Part shown: one piece after another, positions 4,376 through 61,794 of the stretch
How the letters are laid out: each line of letters begins with the position of its first letter
How positions within the stretch are numbered: the stretch's first letter is position 1
From: Octopus sinensis
Lineage: Eukaryota
Assembly (NCBI RefSeq): GCF_006345805.1
Contig: NC_043000.1
Span: 90,520,001 to 90,584,000, forward strand
Direction of reading: 5' to 3'
DNA: 64,000 bases
The notes under the pieces: model-generated
Told to the model about the DNA's origin: nothing
The model's database searches: none
What the model saw: the letters and a program-made list of their open reading frames with translations, nothing else
Translations under genes and position numbers: made by a program

Positions 4376-4555
4376 CCTTTATTTTATTCTTTTATATGTG
4401 TTAGTCATTTGACTGCGACCATGCTGGAGCACCGCCTTTAGTCGAGCAAATCGACGCCAGGACTTTATTGTTTGTAAGCCTGGTCCCTTTTGTCGAAGCG
4501 CTAAGTTACGGGGACGTAAACACATGATCATCGGTCGTCAAGCGAAGCTGTGGAC

Positions 4556-4623
<68 letters not shown>

Positions 4624-5317
4624 TGTTAGGAAATTATTAAAACGATAAAGACGTTCTGTCGTATATTTAAGTTAAACGGGCAGAGAGTTTTTCATTCTGC
4701 ACTGTAAGGTCAGGATGAAGTCCATTGTCAAAATGGGGGAAGCTAGATGTTAATAGCCAGCTTGGGAAACTCTAACAAATTGGCTAGGCTTTAGCTAACC
4801 TTTATAAGCAGACATAATTGTACCCCCAGTTTTTTGTGACAACATTCAATTGGATTCTGGAAGCTGTGATTGCCTGTTTAGTTTATGCACTTTGTGCTTT
4901 GTGTTAGGCATTTATGGAATTATTTCAAGCTCCAGGAATTCGCCAGAACTTTTTGCTTGTCAGTTTTAAAATAATTTCTGTCATATTTGGGTCCAAAGTT
5001 CGAAAACCAAATTTGTGAGGCCAATTTGTGAATCCAGAGTGACGAATCCAAGTTTATGAAACGAAGATGGTGAAGCCGGGTTTCTGAGTTCGTATTTCTG
5101 AACTATATATATTTTACCTTTATAAATATTTTGACTGCACGTCTAGTGTAGCATTAATTTATTTTGTTCGTATATATTTGTTTTGTATGTAGAGTGTTTG
5201 TTTATGCTGACACTTAATTGTTAATAAAATTTTACAAAGAAATTCGTGGTGTGTTGTTGTTTTGAGTTACCCCAACCTTTTTCGTTGTGTAAATTCGGGT
5301 TATGGTCACCAGGTCGT

Positions 5318-5375
<58 letters not shown>

Positions 5376-5538
5376 GACAGGCTTCTTTCAGTTTCCGTCT
5401 ATCAAATCCACTCACAAGGCTTTGCTCCGCCCGAGGCTATAGTAGAAGAGACTTGTCCAATGTACCAAACAGTGGGATTGAAGTCGGAACCATGTGGTTG
5501 ATAAGCAGGCTACCTACCACACAGCCACTCCTGCGCCT
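4376..5538 (-). mobile_element. Composite SINE (head A 5373-5538, internal microsatellite, body B 4376-4565) interrupted by a solo LTR
   Basis: Head and body match the intact A-microsatellite-B copies at 13711-14129, 55929-56408 and 61375-61794. Confidence 0.7.
4624..5321 (+). mobile_element. Putative solo LTR (698 bp)
   Basis: TGTTA...TAACA termini (TG...CA), TATAAATA at 5121, AATAAA at 5223, flanks ACAT/ATAT as an imperfect 4-bp TSD, lying inside a (CA)n/(TA)n tract. Confidence 0.6.
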
Positions 5539-5738
5539 ATATATATATATATATATATATATGGAAGCGGATTTGAAAATTTGTAGACAGTATTTGATAG
5601 GAGAAAGTGTGTATTGTTTAGTCAAAACTATATGAGAAATCATATTTAAGTATTTATACGGAACTTTAGGGGAATGACCAACTTTTTTAGTTCATCTCCA
5701 GTCTTGTATGTGTTTGGCAAATGTATATATATATATAT

Positions 5739-5792
<54 letters not shown>

Positions 5793-5944
5793 TACACACA
5801 TATATATATATATATACTTTTTATCGTTTTTATCGTTTATCTTAATTTTTTTCAAGATCTGGTATTTATTTTATCGGAGCCTTTTGTAGAAACGCTAAGT
5901 ACGGGGATGCAAACAAACCAAACTTAATGTTATACTTTTTGTAT

Positions 5945-6002
<58 letters not shown>

Positions 6003-6372
6003 ACCCGAGTGCTATATTGCTTCATTTGGTCATTCCTTTGTACACAGACGCACACACACACACACGTACACACACACGCACACGTATGTATGTATTTATG
6101 TATGTGTGTCTGTATGTATGCGCACACACATGTGTGTATAATCTTCTAACGGGTAGCCATTACGTCTCTTGTATCATCAGAGAATGCTAGTGACAAGAGA
6201 AAAGCTGGAGGTCTGTGAACGCTTGACGCGCTGGGAAAGATGCCTTTAGCTTCCAGTATACGGGGCCCTATCTGCGGATCTTATCTATTTAGGCCGACAG
6301 AACAACAACAACAACAACAACAATAATAGTAATAATAACGATAATAATAATGATAATGATAATGATAATAAT

Positions 6373-7989
6373 AGCAACGAGAGAATGAGAAGTAGCACTG
6401 ACGGTAACATTAAAATACACAGGAGCATTTTCCAAGGAGACTCGCTCTCTCCGTTACTCATTGCGTTAACCCTTCTGACAACTCATTGCCTTAATCCTTC
6501 TGATATTGCGTTAATCCTTCTGACAACTCATTGCGCTAATTCTTCTGACATTGCACTAATCCTTCTGACAACTGTACTGAGAAAATCCGGGTCTGCCTAT
6601 GACTTTACCAAAACCAAGATAAGAATAAATCACTTACTTTATTTGGATGATCTCAAGATATATACAAAAAAATGAGACAGATCGGAATTCTCTGCTCCAA
6701 ACAGTCAGAATATTCTGTAAAGCACTGGAATGCAGTATGGTGCAGGTAAGTGTGAAGTTCTAACTGGGAAGAGAAGCCGGAAGATAAAGTAGTGTTGCAA
6801 GACGATAAGATAATGGAAAGAGATATGAGAGAGGCACTATGGAGTACAAAAGGAGAACTGCGAAGGTGCACGAATCAAAATTAAATGGAAAGCGCATCAT
6901 TAAAGCCACTTACGCATAGGCAATGTCAGTATTAAACTATTCTGCCCCCTTTCTGAAATGGACAAAAATCAACTCGCAGAACTTGTGTAGAACAGTTAGA
7001 AAGCCACAATCCACCCAAAAAGTAATACTGACCAACTCTGTCTGACAGGAACACCAAATTCAGCTACTTAGGTCGCACATAGACTGTTTCATAACCTTAA
7101 TTACTAAATGTGGAAGACACTGTGGGTACTGTGACACTAGGTCTGAAAAATTATGTTGTACAGAGTAAAGAAAGAATACTTTCGGCAGCCAGAGATGCCC
7201 CAAAGGTGACAGAAGCAGTAAAAGAAATTAAAGAGAAAAAGAAAAACAACAGGATGAACTAATGAAAAGAAATGGAACTGCATGACCAATTCATGAAACA
7301 AACGGAAAATATTGGAAGTGAAACTCGCTGGATTTGGTTGACGGACGGAATCTTGAAATGAGAAACAGAAACGTTAATTATAGCGACTCAGGAATAAACC
7401 CTTAGAACAAATCTGAATAAAGGCAAAGGTCAACAAAACTCAAGTAGCAAATGTAGAATCTGCAGGAAAGGAGACGAGAGTATTAGTCACATTTTGATTG
7501 GGTACAAAAGGAGTACAAGTGCAGACATGACTGTATAGGCAAAAAAGTGCATTGGGATGTTGGTCGAGTATGTAGCTTCAAAACTTCGCTATAAAACTTC
7601 GCTATAAAGACTAACGATACTATTGAGGCAAGAAGACCAGACTTGATTATAGGGGGGAAATAAACAGTGCAAGATCATATATTTTCGCAATTCCCTACGA
7701 TAGCAGAATCGATACCAAAGAAATGGAAGAAATTGAGAGCTGAGGAAACTGTAGAAGACCAAGACAATAATTATTTCTTTTGCAATCGGTGCAGTTGGTA
7801 CAACACTCAAAATGCTATCTAAAAGACTGAAAGAAAGCGGAATTGAAACTTACACTGTCGAATTGTAGAAAAGTACCATCCTATATTTTATAAGAATCCT
7901 AATAAAAATTCTTGAAATTTGAGGAGACTTGTTGTCTTCTCAAACTTGGAGATAAAATTCTTGCTAACTATATTGGCATACACTTGCGT
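6373..7989 (+). mobile_element. 5'-truncated, degenerate R4/Dong-type LINE (RT C-terminal half, CCHC-type knuckle, REL endonuclease)
   Basis: IFQGDSLSPLL and NHLLYLDDLKIY RT motifs (ORF 6385-6675); CRICRKGDESISHIL and RHD near 7450-7530; RRPDLII and FAIGAVGT near 7630-7800; (TAA)n on both sides. Confidence 0.85.
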
Positions 7990-8252
7990 AATAATAATAA
8001 TAATAATAATATAATAATAATAATAATGATAATAATAATAATAATAATAGTAGTAGTAGTAATAGTAGTAGTAGTAGTAGTAGTAATAATAACTTGGAGA
8101 TAAAATTCTTGCTAACTATATTGGCATACAATTGCGTAATAATAATAATAGTAATATTAATAATAATAATAATAATAATAACAGTAGTAGTAGTAGTAAT
8201 AATAATAGTAATAATAATAGTAATAATAATAGTAGTAGTAATAGTAGTAGTA

Positions 8253-8300
<48 letters not shown>

Positions 8301-8309
8301 GTAGTAGTA

Positions 8310-8345
<36 letters not shown>

Positions 8346-8360
8346 GTAGTAGTAGTAGTA

Positions 8361-8416
<56 letters not shown>
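7990..8416. repeat. (TAA)n/(TAG)n tract containing a 47-bp duplicate of the LINE 3' end (8091-8137)
   Basis: Directly visible. Confidence 0.95.
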
Positions 8417-8417
<1 letters not shown>

Positions 8418-8812
8418 GAGATCACGAAGAAAAAAATACTTTCTAATTGATGTATCAATACCAGCAGATGACAACGTGTCTCTAAACGAAATGGAGAAAC
8501 TTTCAAAATTCAAAGACCTGAAAATAGAGGTAATTCGAATGTGGAGTTTAAAAACAGAAACAATTCCTTTCATTATAGGCGCATTAGGTATGATAAAAAA
8601 ATATTCAGAGAAATACATAACAAAAACACCAAGACTAAAAAAATATATATAACATACAGAAAATAGCACTACTAGGCACCACACACATCCTACGTAAAAC
8701 ACTTTTAGCACAGTAACAATAAGAGCATCACATCAAACCACAGCACATGCCCAAGGCACACGAAGCTGCGCTCGGTAGTGCAGTGACAGCACGTGATAAA
8801 AGTAAGACTACA

Positions 8813-8813
<1 letters not shown>
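8417..8813 (+). mobile_element. Short 3' fragment of a second R4/Dong-type LINE (REL domain, 3' UTR, TAA tail)
   Basis: Translates to YFLIDVSIPADDNVSLNEMEKLSKFKDLKIEVIRMWSLKTETIPFIIGALG...IQKIALLGTTHILRKTL; TAA tracts at both ends. Confidence 0.85.
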
Positions 8814-8846
<33 letters not shown>

Positions 8847-11800
8847 CACAAAAATGAAACTTTACTGCCATACAAAGCAGTTTCTCCCGTGCACGACGTC
8901 TCGGTGAAACATGTGCGAAACACGTGTAATCAACACCGGAAAGTTTAAAAATTATAAAATATGAATGGAACAAAACAGTAAGTACATAAATTGCGTAATT
9001 ACGCATACACTCGAATGCCTACACAATCATGTATATATTTTAATACCCTAGGACTACGCATACACCCTAATGTTTACATAACTACGTGACATTTACAGGA
9101 CACACATACACGCACATGAAAACACGTGTCACAAACGAGGCAAAAAGAAAAGAAAACAAAAAACGAAATAAAACAATCTTTTATTTTTCGAACTAACACA
9201 GACACCACAAAAAACTATGCCCGGAGATAAATCTATCAGCAAAAAAATACAAATACAGATCTGTTAGTCTTAAAAAGCTACGTCACGAGCAATGTTTACA
9301 TGAAGAGATCCGTCTCCTAATGTCAACGTTCAAGCTCGTCATGCCTCAATCATAACAAAGCCGAATACAAACCAGGTTTGTCGTCTTCCGGGACATCAAG
9401 GGTCGCGTAGTCGAATGATGAACCAGGTTCGGTACGAAATATCAGCTACTAGTTCAAATATTCCCGAAACACAGGAGCTGGAAGTACCCCACAACGGGAA
9501 TATTCCAACACATGCCCATCCATGCTCGTCATCAAATAACCAAAAGAAAAAGAATGAAAAATGGTCTAGGGGAAATAATAAAGAAGTTCTTTACGGCCTC
9601 TTATCATGCCATATATCTTCCCACAAATAAATCTAATACTGTACAAAACTACTTAAACTTTGAAGTAAGACCCTACATAGACTGTAACAAACTTGCCAAC
9701 GCCAGAAGAAACATTATGAAAAGAAATTACTAACTGAATTAGAGATTGAACACATTAAACAATCAGTACGGGATAAAAGGAACGAAGTTGCAGCTAAAGA
9801 AGATATTACAGAATAAATAATTATAGACCAGTCCAGGGTTGATGAAAATGCAATAATAATCGAAAGAGTTAATGTAACTGATAGGCAAAGTGAAATACTC
9901 TCTGAACCAACCATAAACACTAAGATAAAAATCGAATAGATAAAGAAAGTTAGATATAAATTTACCCAACAGGACTGCATGTTCTAAAAAAATCAAATCA
10001 TGATTGAATGGCTTAAAATGAAAGAATCCCAATAGGAATGAATGCGATACTCTCCCGAAAATTCCCAACTCTAAACAAAACCTGAAAATACTTGGTAAAA
10101 TCCGCCTTGGACTTAAGATATAATTTCAGCTAATGATGTTGATATTACAGATCTCAACCATCTGTACTATGCATCCGCGAAAATCTCAACGATTCTATGT
10201 GGTGAAAAGATTAGAAAACAACAACATTCCCATAAAAAGCCTACTTGCCAAGAGCGTATTCAACCCCAAATTTAGCTATTTAGGTCTCACATAGAATGTT
10301 TAAAAACCTTAATTTTGACAAGAGTATCAAACCAACAGAAATCCGAAAATTAAAGTAAAAAATATATGAAAACCATATTTGACATCGATACCACCATAGA
10401 AACCATGAAGCAAAAGATATGTGCTAAAGCTGCCGGCAAAGCATGGTATGAAAAGCGCGTTAGATTCTTCAAGGACAATAACATGTTAAAAAATAACCCA
10501 ACAAATTTTTACAGGAAGATAAGGAAAATACCAGTTACACTAAAGTCTATCCCATCAAAAGAAGTGCAGGAATTTTGGAATAAAATTTGGACAGAAGAAA
10601 AAACACTCAATGAAAAGGCCCCTTAGATTGATAGAATATCTAGACTTAGAATCCTTAGAAGAGCAAAAGTGGGAGGGTATCAAGGTAGAGGATGAAAGGT
10701 CTGCCCTTAGGAAGTCAAGCAAATGGAAGTCTCCAGGAAAGGATAACATTCCTAACTTCTGGTTGAATGTCTTTCCAGAGAGCCATGAATTGCTAACAAA
10801 ACTTTACAACAATGTTTTGCAACGATCCAGTGTGATTTCCTCTTACCTAGTTAATGGTGTAACATTCCTACTTTCAAAAAATGAAGAAACAAATGAACCA
10901 AAAAAATATAGACCCATAACCTGCTTACCAACAATGTATAAAATGCTAACATCTGTCTTGACTGAATATACCTATAGCCTTTTAATAGGAATTGGTATAT
11001 TCCCTAATGAGCAAAAAGGATGTAAACGTGGGTCTTATGGTTGTAAAGATAAGCTACTCATCAATAAAATGATCTTGGAAGATTGTCACAAACGACACAA
11101 AATCTTGTCGATAACTCTGCGAATGCAGAGCCGAGGGTACGGGCTTGAAGAAGTTCTCGGTATCGAGCGCGGGTAAACGGCGGGAGTAACTTGGACTCTC
11201 TTCAGGTGAACGGATCGAAGGCGACGAGGATGTTGCCGCTATCCCTATCTACTACTGTCTAGCGATAAGCAGAGCTGAGTTACTACGACGAAGACCACGA
11301 GTGTGTGTGTCCGTGTGTTATCCACGCGCATCGAAGCGGCGATTTCACTTGAGAGAGTTCTCGGTCGAGTGCACGAGTCGAAAGAGTTATGCGGCCGGTC
11401 GATTGCCGGGGAGTAAGTCTGATAGACTATAAAAAAGCTTTTGATAGTCTACTACATAACTGGATTAAGAAATATCTAGAAAAGTTTAAAATAGCGCCTA
11501 CTCTGCGAAACTTCTTGTCTGTAAGTAAGAGATCATGGAGAACCACATTGACTTTGAACAGTGACAATGAATCTCTTAATGCTGGAGATGTAAGAATTTC
11601 ATGTGGCATTTGCTAGGGTGACTCTCTATCACCACTCCTCTTTTGTCTAGTCTTAATATCGCTCTCGAAAGTGCTCAATGATCTACAATACAATTATAAA
11701 ATGCTTGATAAAAATATAAATCATCTCATTTACATGAATGATAAAATTCTCTTTGTAAAAAATGACCAACAACTACAGGGCTTACTAGCGACTGTTAAAC

Positions 11801-12680
11801 AATTCAGTGGTGACATCAGGATGCAATTTGGTCTTGATAAATGTGCAAAAGCTACCTTTATCAAAGAAAAAATGACAGAAACATCCAATTTTAATCTTGA
11901 CCAGCAGAATACCATAAAGGAATTAGAACCAGCGGAGAGCTACAAATACCTAGGAGTATCCGAATCAAACATTCAGTGATGAAGGAAAGGATCAGAAGAG
12001 AATATTATCGCAGGGTAAGGGCAATACTCAAGAGAATGCAAAAAACAGGATCGAAGCGATCAATACTTTAGCCATACCAGTCGTGACTTACAGTTTCAAT
12101 ACCATTAACTGGTCAATTACTGAAGTATGTAATCTTGACAGAAAAATACGAAAATTGTTGACAATGCATAGAATGCACCACCCTAAGGCAGATATAGAAC
12201 GACTTTACCTGCCAAGAAAAAAGGGAAGCCGTGAACTTTTACAACTGGAATTAACAATGGAAATTGCCAAAACTGGCCTAGACACCTACCTGAAAAATTC
12301 TGATGACTGGATGTTATAACTTGTCTCAAAGCATTAAAACAACAAAACATCATACTCAGTAACAAAACAGGCAAAGGAATATCTTTGGGGTTTGAATAAT
12401 TCACCTCTGGAAACATGGGTGTTTCGTTCAACATCCTTATACAACCCTTATTCAGGTTTTTTTTTGTGTAGGATGGGTTACTCGACCTGATGAAAATTCT
12501 AACTGGGTCCCACCTGCAATGTCAGGCGCTGTTAATTTTGATATGAGATCACCATGTTGCGCACATATGGTTGCGATTCATGTGTCTGGTGTACCCTTAT
12601 CAAATAGATAGTCATGATGTGTATACTGGACTTCGTATATTTTACACCGGTTTCACTTTGATGGAAAGCACTGTTCTCAA
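8847..12680 (+). mobile_element. Long degenerate R4/Dong-type LINE (N-terminal region plus RT), REL domain deleted, TAA tail; 5' boundary uncertain
   Basis: Frameshifted ORFs 9415-12319 with WKSPGKDNIPNFWL, YRPITCLPTMYK, EQKGCKRGSYGCKDKLLINK, IDYKKAFDS, NHLIYMND, QFGLDKCAK, YKYLG and HHPKADIERLYLPRKKG; (TAA)n from 12679. Confidence 0.85.
11120..11417 (+). other. GC-rich insertion composed of degenerate 28S rRNA fragments, splitting the LINE RT
   Basis: 11166-11207 matches the conserved 28S core AGCGCGGGTAAACGGCGGGAGTAACTATGACTCTCTTAAGGT at 39/42 (first 26 nt identical). Further 28S-like blocks at 11126-11147 and 11239-11265. TCTG repeats at 11116-11119 and 11418-11421. About 55% GC by hand count, in AT-rich LINE sequence. 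Confidence 0.85.
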
Positions 12681-12691
12681 TAATAATAATG

Positions 12692-12755
<64 letters not shown>

Positions 12756-13624: not shown

Positions 13625-13692
<68 letters not shown>

Positions 13693-13710
13693 ATACATAG
13701 ATATATATAT

Positions 13711-14126
13711 AGGCGCAGGAGTGGCTGTGTGGTAGGTAGCTTGCTTACCAGCCACATGGTTCCGGGTTCAGTTCTACTGTCTTCTATACAGCCTCGAGCC
13801 GACCAAAGCCTTGTGAGTGGATTTTGTAGACGGAAACTGAAAGAAGCCCGTCGTATATATATGCATATATATATGTATATATATATGTATATATGTATAT
13901 ATGTATATATGTGTATATGTTTGTGTGTCTGTGTTTGTCCCTGCACCATTGCTTGACAACCAATGTTGGTGTGTTTACGTACCCGTAACTTAGCGGTTTG
14001 TCAAAAGAGACCGATAGACTAAGCACTAGGCTTACAAAGAATAAGTCCTGGGGTCGATTTGCTCGACTAAAGGCGGTTCTCCAGCATGGCCACAGTCAAA
14101 TGACTTAAACAAATAGAAGAATAAAA

Positions 14127-20380: not shown

Positions 20381-20526
20381 GTGGCTGTGTGGTAAGAAGC
20401 CTGCTTCCCAACCACATGGTTCCACTTTCAGTCCCACAGCATTGCACCTTAGGCAGGTATTTATTGGATGAAAGGCGGTGCTCCGGCATAGCCGCAGTGA
20501 AATGACTGAAACAAGTAAAAGAATAA
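20381..20526 (+). mobile_element. Internally deleted A/B SINE (head fused directly to the body 3' end)
   Basis: GTGGCTGTGTGGTAAGAAGC head continuing into AAAGGCGGTGCTCCGGCATAGCCGCAGTGAAATGACTGAAACAAG. Confidence 0.7.
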
Positions 20527-21968: not shown

Positions 21969-23350
21969 TATATATATATATGTATATATATATAAGTATA
22001 TATATGTATGTGTGTATATATGTACGCACGCATTCTATATATATTCAAGCATACCTACATAAATATACGCACACACACACACATATATCTACCAGTATAC
22101 ACACAGACATCCATGGACTCACACATAAATATGCATAGAAGCATATGTATTTATAAAAATGTATATATATATATATATATATATTGTCACACATGAATAC
22201 ATATACACGAAGCCTCACATCACGTACAAGAAGTTACATATGAATAAATACGATATATAAACACAATACTATTCATAATTATTTGTACATTTATATAGAC
22301 ACAAACACGAAGTACACACACACACACACGCACACACACACACACACGCACGCACACACACACACACACACGCACACACACACACAACCTGAAGATTGAG
22401 AAACATCACGACCATATTTCTTATCCATATACTTAACGTCTTGTATTTCACATTTCCACATTAATGTCTTCCTGGTATAGAAGCGTGTGTTCGGTATGTA
22501 GAATAGCAAATATATGTGAACCACATTGATAATAAATGTAAAGTGTTGACATTGATGAACTTGTAGCATTAGTACAGAATTATAAACAATGAAATGAAAC
22601 TCCAAATAAAACGAAAATGAAAGAATAATATATTAAAAAATCACATTGTGAAATTCTAGAGTTAATGTCTACGGTATGGAGCTAAATATGTTAGTTGAAA
22701 CAACAAGGGCGCCATCTATGACCTATTTCGGAAGGCCTCAGAAAATACTGAACGGGTTGTGGAAAAAGACCAACATTTTTGTTTGTTGCAACAGAAAACA
22801 GCTCATCTACGCGAGAAATTTTAAATCTCGAATAGGAAACCCAGTACGAAAGCTTGCAACTGAGTAAATTTGGGTCAAAATATCCATTAATCAGGTAGTG
22901 GTGTTAAACAAGGCAAAGCATCAAACCTACTACTGTCAAAGAGGTGTAGTCCAATATCCCGGCTTCTGTACCGTTTTCGTTTACTCACTTTCATTCACTG
23001 AGCATGGCTCTTATCTGAGAACTTCTGTCAAAAGTACAAGCGTAGTAATGTAATTCGAAACACGATTTTTATCCAAGAAGTTAACGATTTCTGATAAGCG
23101 TCCATGTCAGTTACGGGGGCACTGAGTTCGATCGCTCACGGAGAAATTATACGAGATAAACAAACACTCATCGCAACTTTCCACTTTCGTGGATCGAATT
23201 TGCTTTCCATTATTTTCCGATGTCAATTTTAATTAATGTTTTAAACATTTTAATCAAATGTTTAAGTTTTATGTATGTATGTATGTATGTATGTATGTAT
23301 GTATGTATGTATGTATGTATGTATGTATGTATGTATGTATGTATGTATGT

Positions 23351-29258: not shown

Positions 29259-29430
29259 AGGTGCGGGTGTGTGGTAAGAAGCTTGCTTTTCAGTCACCTG
29301 GTGCTGGGTTCAATCCTACTGCGTGTCAGCTTGGGCAAGTGTCTTCTACTATAGCCTCGGGTCAACCAAAGCCTTGTGAGTGCATTTGGTAAACGGAAAC
29401 TGAAAGAAGCCCATCGTATATATATATATA

Positions 29431-29476
<46 letters not shown>

Positions 29477-37786: not shown

Positions 37787-37886
37787 NNNNNNNNNNNNNN
37801 NNNNNNNNNNNNNNNNNNNNNNNNNNNNNNNNNNNNNNNNNNNNNNNNNNNNNNNNNNNNNNNNNNNNNNNNNNNNNNNNNNNNNN
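37787..37886. other. Assembly gap (100 N)
   Basis: Run of exactly 100 N. Confidence 1.
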
Positions 37887-55928: not shown

Positions 55929-56408
<480 letters not shown>

Positions 56409-59060: not shown

Positions 59061-60218
59061 ATGATAATCGTGGGATCAATAATAATTCAACTAACCCTAA
59101 CTCTAATTTTAGAAAATATAATCTGGTTGAATATTCCTTTTAACTGGGCGATATTATCGGATATATACGGCAAATTCAAAATAATACTAGAAAAAATTTT
59201 CCAGCCTCTCATAAGTATCATTTCTAAGAGAACAGTTAGGATTTCTTACTCAACCCTCCCAAATATGTCCACTATAATAGCTAGAATTAATAATAAAAAC
59301 ATTAAGTTAGCCAGGAATAATAAGACTAATTCCAGCATGAATACCAATAATAATTGTAATAATATTATCATAGATAAAAATAAAAATAAAAATAATAACA
59401 ACAATAATAAGAATTATCAAGATAAGTGCAGCATCAACAGCAATGGAATAACTAATAATGATATTGATATTAATAGGAATAATAATAATGATAATAATAT
59501 GAGCAATACAAATAGAAATAATATCGGGAATGAAGATAACAACGATATCTATAGCAGTAATAAGCATTCGGATATTAATACAAACAATAATAATAGCAAT
59601 ACCAATAATGTTGATAATTATGATATGACTATGGTAGATCTAAATGATAGTATAATCGGATCGATAAACGGTAACACATCTTCAGATAAAAATATTATCG
59701 ATAATAACGATAATAATACTCATGATAATTTGAATAGCAGCAATATGAGAGATCTATCCTTAAATAATTCTAAATCTGAAAATTATCTCCCTAGTTGCAA
59801 TTGTAGGATTAAGTCAAAATGCCTGACATCTGGTCTGTGTGGGGCCCATAATGTAATCTATAAATGTACTATAACTACTGCGAATAGCAAATTCTTTTAT
59901 CTAGGTTGTACTATAAAATTTAAACAAAGAATAAGCAATCATCTCTCCTCTTTTAAGTTACGTCATAAAGCTAGCTGTACCACACTTTCCAGTAAGATCT
60001 GGGAACTCAAAACTAATGATATTAAATATAACCTAAAATGGGAAATAGTTAGAAAGGCAATGCCTTATAAAAATAATAGGGTAGGTTGCCAACTCTGCTC
60101 CTTGGAGACATATGAAATTCTAAAACATAGAAAAAATAAAAACCTATTGAATAACCGTATTGAGATAGGTCAGTCTTGCATTCATTCAAAAATCAAAACT
60201 CTAAAATGTTTTAAATAG
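59061..60218 (+). CDS. Penelope-like ORF fragment (385 aa) with C-terminal GIY-YIG endonuclease
   Basis: ORF track; motifs as listed for the element. The true ORF continues upstream through apparent frameshifts near 58900 and 59110. Confidence 0.8.
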   Translation: MIIVGSIIIQLTLTLILENIIWLNIPFNWAILSDIYGKFKIILEKIFQPLISIISKRTVRISYSTLPNMSTIIARINNKNIKLARNNKTNSSMNTNNNCNNIIIDKNKNKNNNNNNKNYQDKCSINSNGITNNDIDINRNNNNDNNMSNTNRNNIGNEDNNDIYSSNKHSDINTNNNNSNTNNVDNYDMTMVDLNDSIIGSINGNTSSDKNIIDNNDNNTHDNLNSSNMRDLSLNNSKSENYLPSCNCRIKSKCLTSGLCGAHNVIYKCTITTANSKFFYLGCTIKFKQRISNHLSSFKLRHKASCTTLSSKIWELKTNDIKYNLKWEIVRKAMPYKNNRVGCQLCSLETYEILKHRKNKNLLNNRIEIGQSCIHSKIKTLKCFK

Positions 60219-61342: not shown

Positions 61343-61374
<32 letters not shown>

Positions 61375-61377
<3 letters not shown>

Positions 61378-61527
61378 CGCAGGAGTGGCTGTGTGGTAAG
61401 TAACTTGCTAACCAACCACATGGTTCCAGGTTCAGTCCCACTGCGTGGCATCTTGGGCAAGTGTCTTCTGCTGACCAATGCCTTGTGAGTGGATTTGGTA
61501 GACGGAAACTGAAAGAAGCCTGTCGTA

Positions 61528-61564
<37 letters not shown>

Positions 61565-61794
61565 GTATATGCGTGTGTGTGTTTGTGTGTCTGTGTTTGT
61601 CCCCCTAGCATTGCTTGACAACTGATGCTGGTGTGTTGACGTTCCCGTCACTTAGCGGTTAGGCAAAAGAGACCGATAGAATAAGTACTGGGCTTACAAA
61701 GAATAAGTCCCGGGGTCGATTTGCTCGACTAAAGGCGGTGCTCCAGCATGGCCGCAGTCGAATGACTGAAACAAGTAAGAGAGTAAAAGAGTAA
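61375..61794 (+). mobile_element. Composite A/B SINE
   Basis: Head A 61375-61526, (TA/TG)n, body B 61590-61794 ending AAACAAGTAAGAGAGTAAAAGAG. Confidence 0.85.

What the first reader, a model, noticed from the sequence alone, without database searches (positions are those of the whole stretch)
11166..11265. The captured 28S segment is the R2/R4/R1 target hotspot, with homology breaking at the R2 site
Seen: similarity stops at CTCTCTTCAGG-T, skips about 36 nt of 28S, and resumes as GAACGGAT...CTATCCCTATCTACTA(CTG)TCTAGCGA. An ACGCGCAT piece of the skipped region appears later at 11324. Established: R2 inserts at TTAAGG^TAGC, R1 inserts about 74 bp downstream in TGTCCCTATCTACT, and nematode R4 inserts between them. 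The interrupted LINE belongs to the R4/Dong REL group. Inference: the insert may be a by-product of site-specific retrotransposition at rDNA (junction read-through transcript, or a non-autonomous R-element derivative), or a target-site mimic carried inside a LINE.
Basis: partly seen in the sequence, partly recalled or inferred. Interest (0 to 1): 0.7.

Follow-up and report, generated by a model that had tools for sequence, protein, structure and literature searches.

The report
Scrambled 28S-like filler inside dead LINE
A decayed Dong/R4-type LINE is split by about 305 bp of rearranged, already-degenerate DNA derived from the 28S rRNA gene; it does cover the R2–R1 target interval and does break at the R2 cut site, but it looks like captured junk rather than a working element.

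Summary
A profile built from 65 real 28S genes aligns window 11166-11265 to 28S (E=3.7e-13). There is a 27-36 nt gap whose left edge lies at the R2 site (TTMAGG^T, ±1 nt). ACGCGCAT is at 11324-11331.

The insert is about 305 bp (11114-11418) and splits the RT motif NLSI|AWIDYKK without losing any LINE codon. Its 28S-like part (11116-11282) is circularly permuted: 28S 410-448, then 278-334, then 359/371-433. The first join lies in a GAAGAA microhomology, as in a head-to-tail array of a 164-nt 28S unit. The remaining 136 nt are not recognisably rDNA.

Four results indicate a source that had already diverged before insertion:
- 15% substitutions at universally conserved 28S positions.
- A GC-ward bias of 8:1 in a 34% GC genome.
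- Four derived changes shared by two copies of one 28S stretch.
- LINE decay of only about 4%.

I found no TSD, tail, TIRs, ribozyme, significant RNA fold or second copy. The R2-site coincidence is not significant (about 10%, or 28-42% if 3-5 named sites are allowed). However, the R2Bm recognition motifs (RUM, RASIN, their spacing) are intact.

Best reading: a fragment of a degenerate 28S-derived repeat captured at a DNA break. A link to R-element activity is possible but unproven, because the host genome could not be reached.

The parts
10366..11113 (+). Left half of a decayed Dong/R4-like LINE (RT N-terminal region, ending ...CHKRHKILSI)
   Evidence: tblastn of L001 RT ORF residues 1-181 maps to 10574-11116 at 57% identity. 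ORF 10366-10626 matches the N-terminal region of relatives.
11114..11418 (+). Insert of about 305 bp: GC 55%, CpG obs/exp 1.46, single copy in the window, no TSD, tail or TIR. It splits NLSI|AWIDYKK with at most 6 nt of LINE ambiguous.
   Evidence: L001 4539 aligns to 11112 and 4546 to 11421.
11116..11152 (+). 28S-like block 1, corresponding to 28S 410-448 (just downstream of the R1 top-strand nick)
   Evidence: nhmmer E=7.5e-4; BLAST E=4.6e-5; alignment.
11146..11207 (+). 28S-like block 2, corresponding to 28S 278-335. It joins block 1 inside a shared GAAGAA and ends at the R2 site. Positions 11167-11192 are 26/26 identical to 28S. The R2Bm RUM and RASIN motifs are intact.
   Evidence: BLAST E=3e-13; nhmmer. 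Motif definitions are from PMC10499050.
11208..11282 (+). 28S-like block 3, corresponding to 28S 359/371-433, following the 27-36 nt gap. It has an extra ACT/CTG at the R1 top-nick position (11252-11257 region).
   Evidence: nhmmer.
11283..11418 (+). Remainder of the insert, not significantly rDNA-like. It contains a GT microsatellite (about 11300-11322), ACGCGCAT (11324-11331), a weak echo of block 2 (11348-11372) and GGGAGTAA (11409-11416).
   Evidence: score 14 against shuffle mean 13.2; 118 of 1000 shuffles reach the internal-repeat score.
11419..12397 (+). Right half of the LINE (RT motifs ...LIDYKKAFDS... through the thumb). It has three in-frame stops and one frameshift. The CCHC/endonuclease part is missing.
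   Evidence: tblastn; Pfam RVT_1 on 11671-11976.
12671..12755 (+). (AAT)n tail or target microsatellite at the LINE 3' end
   Evidence: L001 ends in the same way.

Best explanation
The insert is non-functional captured DNA. It is a fragment of about 305 bp cut from a degenerate, GC/CpG-rich sequence derived from the 28S gene. That source had already been rearranged into head-to-tail copies of a roughly 164-nt 28S unit (28S 279-442, joined at two GAAGAA repeats). The source could be a defective rDNA unit, an rDNA orphon, a small 28S-derived tandem repeat, or mosaic 28S DNA of the kind found at R2 ends. The fragment was pasted, without target duplication and with little or no loss of target bases, into a chromosome break inside an already integrated, dying Dong/R4-type LINE. 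The joining was by end joining or by microhomology-primed copying. Shown: the anatomy, the permuted order, the divergence pattern and the clean target site. Inferred: the repair mechanism and the nature of the donor.
For: (1) Permuted 28S order with a junction in a GAAGAA microhomology. Positions 11116-11282 align collinearly to a synthetic tandem array of 28S 279-442 with score 80.75, against 26.1±4.4 for shuffles. A single contiguous 28S piece cannot start at 410 and continue at 278, so the donor already held the junction.
(2) The source had already diverged. There are 17 substitutions at 113 positions that are >=90% conserved across eukaryotes, plus six indels. AT>GC outnumbers GC>AT 8 to 1 in a 34% GC genome (p=0.0011). 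CpG obs/exp is 1.46, against 0.45-0.58 in the LINE flanks. The two copies of 28S 415-433 (11119-11140 and 11262-11283) share four derived changes seen in none of the real 28S sequences where this stretch was examined (35 of the 65) (p about 3e-4). The LINE itself has decayed only about 3.8% (95% upper bound 9.9%), estimated from 3 stops in 471 codons.
(3) Clean insertion. Relatives read NLS[I/T]AWIDYKK across the site. At most 6 nt are ambiguous. There is no TSD, poly(A), TIR or other TE hallmark. A possible 6-of-7 nt microhomology lies at the right junction (donor-type CTTGGAC against LINE CCTGGAT).
(4) No sign of function. RNA-fold z-scores are -0.05 and -0.04. There is no Rfam family, no protein homologue of the open frame and no second copy in 64 kb.
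Against: The tandem-array inference rests on one junction plus shared derived changes in a short stretch. The second half of the insert is not significantly similar to 28S or to the first half. The age argument uses a crude stop-codon clock: at its upper bound, 17 substitutions have p=0.06. Microhomologies at the junctions are short and ambiguous. The 42-nt near-perfect core, flanked by much more diverged sequence, is not what uniform neutral decay predicts.
Confidence: 0.5

Rival explanations
1. One-step capture of canonical 28S rRNA or rDNA. Several template switches by a reverse transcriptase or a repair polymerase on normal 28S produced the mosaic at the moment of insertion, and all divergence accumulated afterwards in place.
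For: The junctions lie in microhomologies: GAAGAA, and T or G at the gap. R2-type reverse transcriptases jump templates in vivo (PMC3414825). 28S rRNA is abundant. The 26-nt perfect run and 93% identity over 42 nt fit a real 28S origin.
Against: Divergence at conserved sites (15%, plus an unrecognisable 136 nt) exceeds the LINE's own decay (about 4%). The change is GC-ward in an AT-rich genome, and the two copies share four derived changes.
Confidence: 0.17
2. By-product of R2/R1/R4-type activity. The donor was an rDNA unit, or the 28S-like end region of an R element, that had been cut by an R2 endonuclease. The deletion starting at the cut site is a repair scar, or the piece is a remnant of a non-autonomous R element.
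For: The gap begins at TTCAGG^T, ±1 nt. The R2Bm recognition motifs are intact. The RUM at -34..-22 is identical. The RASIN fits TTNANNT, including the essential T+1. Spacing is unchanged, and the three differences (-15, -14, -4) fall on tolerated positions. Diverged 28S-like stretches, including duplications up to 113 nt and pieces from downstream of the site, are documented at R2 ends (PMC3774820, PMC5035012). R2 occurs in molluscs and many other phyla.
Against: No R-element sequence, HDV-like ribozyme or genuine downstream TAGCC junction is present. The R2-site hit is expected by chance about 10% of the time. By my own count from the alignment, the lower substitution density in the core (3/39 against 12/60 conserved positions) is only suggestive. 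With three substitutions, missing all eight critical bases has p of about 0.5. The start of block 1 does not match an R1 junction. The host's rDNA and its R elements are unknown.
Confidence: 0.2
3. Functional target-site mimic or decoy propagated as part of a LINE or a non-autonomous element.
For: The R2 recognition module is intact within otherwise degraded sequence.
Against: The insert frameshifts and truncates the RT. A relative has an empty site. There is a single copy in the window. There is no significant RNA structure and no terminal hallmarks.
Confidence: 0.04
4. Artefact: a mis-assembly or chimeric read joining rDNA-like sequence into a LINE, or chance similarity.
For: The window contains a 100-N gap elsewhere (37787-37886). 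Read support cannot be inspected.
Against: E=3.7e-13 excludes chance. The two LINE halves resume at adjacent codons. The inserted sequence is not canonical rDNA, so a simple chimera with an rDNA read is unlikely.
Confidence: 0.03

Closest known systems
Templated or 'filler' DNA insertions at repaired double-strand breaks (NHEJ/MMEJ capture of distant genomic or cDNA fragments; from general knowledge, e.g. templated sequence insertions described in human and yeast cells)
   Same: A few hundred bp of foreign sequence sits at a clean break. There is no target-site duplication, no tail, and short microhomologies at junctions. The content is mosaic.
   Different: The donor here appears to be an already degenerate 28S-derived repeat rather than a unique locus or fresh cDNA. 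The donor was not identified.
rDNA orphons and 28S fragments outside the rDNA arrays, including those flanking R1/R2 copies in Drosophila heterochromatin (general knowledge; tandem R1 arrays separated by 28S target pieces are described in PMC2718515)
   Same: Short, degenerate 28S pieces from exactly this target interval lie away from functional rDNA, sometimes tandemly arranged.
   Different: No R1 or R2 sequence accompanies the 28S pieces here. The location is inside a LINE reading frame.
28S-like sequences carried at the ends of R2 elements (R2 3' UTRs in fish, PMC5035012; duplicated and diverging 28S sequences at R2 5' junctions, PMC3774820)
   Same: These are diverged copies of 28S sequence adjoining the R2 site. 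The 28S-like stretch ends at the R2 cut site. Duplications of up to about 113 nt, and pieces from downstream of the site, are documented.
   Different: Those stretches adjoin R2 UTR or ORF sequence on one side and genuine 28S on the other. Neither is present here.
SIDEs: R2 and R2/R1 hybrid short internally deleted elements (PMC3414825)
   Same: They are small non-coding derivatives associated with the R2-R1 interval.
   Different: SIDEs have an R2 ribozyme and an R2 or R1 3' end, and they sit in 28S at the R2 or R1 site with typical junctions. None of these was found.

Membership tests
Functional eukaryotic LSU rRNA gene segment (Rfam RF02543) | Scores against the LSU covariance model | tested here: not met
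   There was no match at the gathering score or at E<=10. A real 401-nt 28S piece scores 436 bits.
Functional eukaryotic LSU rRNA gene segment (Rfam RF02543) | Collinear order and intact universally conserved core | tested here: not met
   The order is 410-448 | 278-334 | 359/371-433. There are 17 changes at 113 conserved positions, and 27-36 nt including helix 71 are deleted.
R2 SIDE / R2-R1 hybrid SIDE (PMC3414825) | HDV-like self-cleaving ribozyme at the 5' end | tested here: inconclusive
   No Rfam ribozyme family matched at E<=10 and the fold z-score is about 0. R2 ribozymes are poorly captured by sequence models.
R2 SIDE / R2-R1 hybrid SIDE (PMC3414825) | Sits in 28S at the R2 or R1 site, with genuine downstream 28S (TAGCC... 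or the 14-bp TSD) | tested here: not met
   Nothing lies between AAGG and the resumed 28S-like sequence. TAGCC... is absent and there is no 14-bp duplication.
R2 SIDE / R2-R1 hybrid SIDE (PMC3414825) | 3' end of the host's R2 or R1 element | not testable with these tools
R2 with 28S-like 3' UTR (PMC5035012) | The 28S-like stretch ends at the R2 site and is followed by genuine 28S, with R2 sequence upstream | tested here: not met
   Block 2 does end at the R2 site. It is preceded by another 28S-like block and followed by diverged 28S lacking +2..+27/36.
Predicted R2 target (R2Bm rules, PMC10499050) | RUM A(-31)WWWGCNNNA(-22), RASIN T(-6)TNANNT(+1), and fixed spacing | tested here: met
   Positions 11174-11186 (GTAAACGGCGGGA) are identical to the wild-type RUM. 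TTCAGG|T fits the RASIN. There is no indel between them. These are rules for the Bombyx protein only, and cleavage was not tested.
TPRT retrocopy or chimeric retrogene made by a LINE | Target-site duplication and a 3' tail (poly(A) or the LINE's microsatellite) | tested here: not met
   There is no TSD beyond an ambiguous GATA, and no A-rich or (TAA)n tail on either strand.
DNA transposon / MITE / Helitron | Terminal inverted repeats with a TSD, or 5'-TC...CTRR-3' ends | tested here: not met
   The ends ACTCTGCG... and ...GGAGTAAGT are not inverted repeats.
Break-repair filler / templated insertion | No TSD, minimal target loss, junction microhomology | tested here: met
   At most 6 nt are ambiguous at the target. 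There is a possible 6-of-7 nt microhomology at the right junction, which is short and ambiguous.
Break-repair filler / templated insertion | Identifiable donor elsewhere in the genome | not testable with these tools
   The host genome is absent from the collections searched.
R4/Dong group of REL-endonuclease LINEs (the interrupted element) | RT followed by a CCHC motif and a PD-(D/E)xK endonuclease, with a (TAA)n-type tail | tested here: inconclusive
   All features are present in the 64%-identical full-length relative L001, which matches solved R2 proteins. The window copy has the RT and an (AAT)n tail but lacks the endonuclease part. No phylogeny was done.

The most novel reading that the evidence does not exclude
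The insert samples an undescribed 28S-derived tandem repeat (unit of about 164 nt, spanning the R2-R1 target interval) that lives outside functional rRNA genes. The repeat keeps an intact R2 recognition module, so it would act as an extra-ribosomal landing pad or decoy for R2-type elements. The deletion that starts at the cut site would be a scar of such an attack.
Probability: 0.1. Interest if true: 0.55.

Novelty: new member of a known kind. Interest (0 to 1): 0.27.

Why it matters
Taken as found, this is one more rDNA-derived fragment in a dead transposon, with no consequence for the host. It would matter only if the host genome holds a family of such 28S-like units with preserved R2 recognition motifs. 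That would give a natural system for asking how rDNA-specific retrotransposons find, or are diverted from, their target. It would also show how R-element damage spawns satellite-like DNA.

Tried and rejected
- Rfam at gathering and at E<=10: no LSU or ribozyme hit. I therefore fetched real 28S genes and used nhmmer and BLAST instead.
- Exact-pattern scans for the deletion junction in metagenome, bacterial/archaeal genome and viral collections: nothing. A canonical 28S pattern found nothing in viral contigs.
- Peptide from the insert's open frame against 5.8 billion proteins: no hit at E<=10.
- Exact look-up of the window's ORF: not on record.
- Contigs carrying the closest LINE relatives (L001, L122, L123): they lack the window's SINE and the insert, so they come from other taxa.
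- RNA folding of both strands: z about 0.
- Hairpin-skipping by a reverse transcriptase as the cause of the gap: the gap covers helix 71 plus 14 nt upstream and 5 nt downstream of single strand, so it is not a clean stem-base skip.
- Second half of the insert as a diverged second repeat unit: not significant, either against 28S or against the first half.
- Natural 28S genes with the tandem junction or this deletion: 0 of 123 loci held.
- Insert start as an R1 junction: rejected, because downstream 28S after R1 starts 60 bp past the R2 site, not 74.
- Exact R4 site: the primary paper is not held and searches did not give it.
- Spliceosomal intron, MITE and Helitron readings: the ends do not fit.

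Full report
**Setting**

The window is AT-rich (34% GC), rich in microsatellites and SINEs, and eukaryotic. From about 10366 to 12397 on the + strand lies a decayed non-LTR retrotransposon. Its reverse transcriptase is at most 69% identical to anything in the protein collection.

The relative I fetched, L001, is 64% identical (57% over the tblastn match) and is full length. It has RT, a CCHC motif, a PD..D..K restriction-like endonuclease and an (AAT)n tail. Its RT-linker region matches solved R2 proteins (9nl2, E=2.7e-12). The window copy also ends in (AAT)n.

**The insert**

A GC-rich block (55% GC, against 35-36% in the LINE flanks) interrupts the RT at 11114-11418. Relatives read NLS[I/T]AWIDYKKAFDS across this point. 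In the window ...KILSI ends at 11113, and ...LIDYKKAFDS resumes at 11419 in another frame.

Protein and DNA alignments to L001 leave at most 6 nt of LINE unaccounted for. There is no convincing target-site duplication, no A-rich or (TAA)n tail on either strand, and no terminal inverted repeats. The block is single-copy in the 64 kb, and it is the only rDNA-like sequence there.

**Checking the observation**

Rfam found nothing. I therefore fetched 120 genuine 28S loci with a conserved 39-mer and built a profile from 65 of them.

nhmmer aligns 11166-11265 to 28S at E=3.7e-13. There is a single 36-nt gap directly after AAGGT, resuming at GAACGGAT. ACGCGCAT is at 11324-11331.

Two qualifications apply:
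- The right end of the gap depends on the alignment. An equally good reading (TGAACGGATCGAAGG = TGACGCGCATGAATGG) makes it 27 nt. The left end stays at the R2 site ±1 nt either way.
- There is a further 28S piece upstream, 11116-11155 = 28S 410-450.

The order along the insert is therefore 410-448, then 278-334, then 359/371-433. The first junction lies in a GAAGAA that occurs at both 279-284 and 443-448 of 28S.

Positions 11116-11282 align collinearly to a synthetic head-to-tail array of 28S 279-442, with score 80.75 against 26.1±4.4 for shuffles. The last 136 nt are not significantly like 28S or like the first half.

**A donor that had already diverged**

Four results point the same way.
- At positions conserved in at least 90% of real 28S genes, the insert has 17 changes in 113, plus six indels.
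- Of the substitutions that change GC content, 8 go AT>GC and 1 goes GC>AT, in a 34% GC genome (p=0.0011). CpG obs/exp is 1.46, against 0.45-0.58 in the LINE flanks and about 0.9 in real 28S.
- The two copies of 28S 415-433 share four derived changes (C>G, C>G, A>G, A>T). None of these occurs in the real 28S sequences where this stretch was examined (35 of the 65) (chance about 3e-4).
- The LINE around the insert has only 3 stops in 471 aligned codons. That implies about 3.8% decay, with a 95% upper bound of 9.9%.

An insert cannot be older than the copy it sits in. Most of its divergence, and the tandem junction, therefore predate the insertion. I conclude the donor was a degenerate, GC-rich, 28S-derived repeat, not the working rRNA gene or its RNA.

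**Mechanism**

A clean target with no duplication or tail, mosaic content and short junction homologies fit capture of a DNA fragment during double-strand-break repair. One candidate homology is donor-type CTTGGAC against LINE CCTGGAT at the right end. This step is inferred.

Template switching by a reverse transcriptase on fresh rRNA would explain the microhomologies but not the divergence pattern. A return of the RT to the exact next LINE nucleotide is also implausible.

**The R-element idea**

The break at the R2 site is real, but taken alone it is weak evidence. With about six breakpoints in 171 nt, a hit within ±1 nt of the R2 site is expected about 10% of the time. The figure is 28-42% if three to five named sites are allowed.

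The insert start does not match an R1 junction. R1's 3' junction is 60 bp past the R2 site and its 5' junction is 74 bp past it (PMC2718515). No R-element sequence, ribozyme or genuine TAGCC junction is present.

One feature does favour the idea. The only well-preserved stretch (42 nt, 3 differences, including a 26-nt perfect run) is the R2 recognition module defined for Bombyx R2 (PMC10499050):
- The RUM (-34..-22) is identical.
- The RASIN fits as TTCAGG|T, including the essential T+1.
- The spacing is unchanged.
- The three differences fall at -15, -14 and -4, all tolerated positions.

Statistically this is only suggestive. By my own count from the alignment, 3 of 39 conserved positions differ in the core, against 12 of 60 elsewhere.

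Diverged 28S duplications at R2 ends are documented (PMC3774820, PMC5035012). A donor scarred by R2 activity therefore remains a live possibility, at about 0.2, and it is compatible with the main explanation.

**Limits**

The host genome could not be reached:
- The window's ORF is not on record.
- The insert's junction and peptide have no match in any collection.
- The contigs that carry the nearest LINE relatives lack the window's SINE, so they come from other taxa.

**Verdict**

The most likely reading is inert captured DNA from a degenerate 28S-derived repeat, a new example of a known kind. Interest is low to moderate.

Noticed in passing
window 6406-8700 (+), and 8728-9006: A second REL-endonuclease LINE of a different family lies just upstream, in the same orientation. 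RT is at 6406-6789, CCHC/endonuclease at 7101-7901, and the endonuclease C-terminus at 8431-8698. Long (ATT/AAT)n-type expansions interrupt it (about 7900-8450). The interrupted LINE seems to sit in or next to its microsatellite tail, as expected for Dong-like (TAA)n targeting.
   Followed up: partly
window 12398-12670: The interrupted LINE loses protein similarity at RT-thumb residue ~284 of 629 of the L001 RTc ORF. It continues for about 270 nt of non-coding sequence to its (AAT)n tail. The CCHC/endonuclease region is therefore internally deleted.
   Followed up: partly
window 5328-5556, 13691-13900, 20381-20432, 29259-29461, 55930-56136, 61357-61570: A SINE-like family of about 200 nt has 77-85% identity between copies, and the copies are usually flanked by (AT)n/(GT)n microsatellites. 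ARAGORN finds no tRNA in the window. From memory it resembles an octopus SINE; this was not verified.
   Followed up: partly
window 59061-60218 (+): An intact 385-aa ORF has an Asn-rich low-complexity middle and a Cys-rich C-terminal domain (CNC...C...GLC...VIYKC...YLG.T..FK.R..H), reminiscent of GIY-YIG-type domains of Penelope-like elements. There is no Pfam hit at E<=0.01.
   Followed up: partly
window 37787-37886: A run of 100 N, which is an assembly gap.
   Followed up: no
window 22299-22387: The only other BLAST match to the fetched rDNA loci (L014, 80% over 98 nt). It lies in a (CTAT)n-type microsatellite region and is probably low-complexity similarity to a spacer, not rDNA.
   Followed up: no
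window 11115-11130: A perfect 6-bp palindrome with a 4-nt loop (CTCTGC GAAT GCAGAG) lies at the very start of the insert. It was created by changes relative to 28S. It could be chance or a snap-back synthesis footprint.
   Followed up: partly
window 10900-11600 and locus L026 250-650: cmscan gave no LSU hit for the insert even at E<=10, although nhmmer gives E=3.7e-13. A real 28S piece of 401 nt scores 436 bits. Short rearranged rRNA fragments can therefore escape the Rfam scan.
   Followed up: yes
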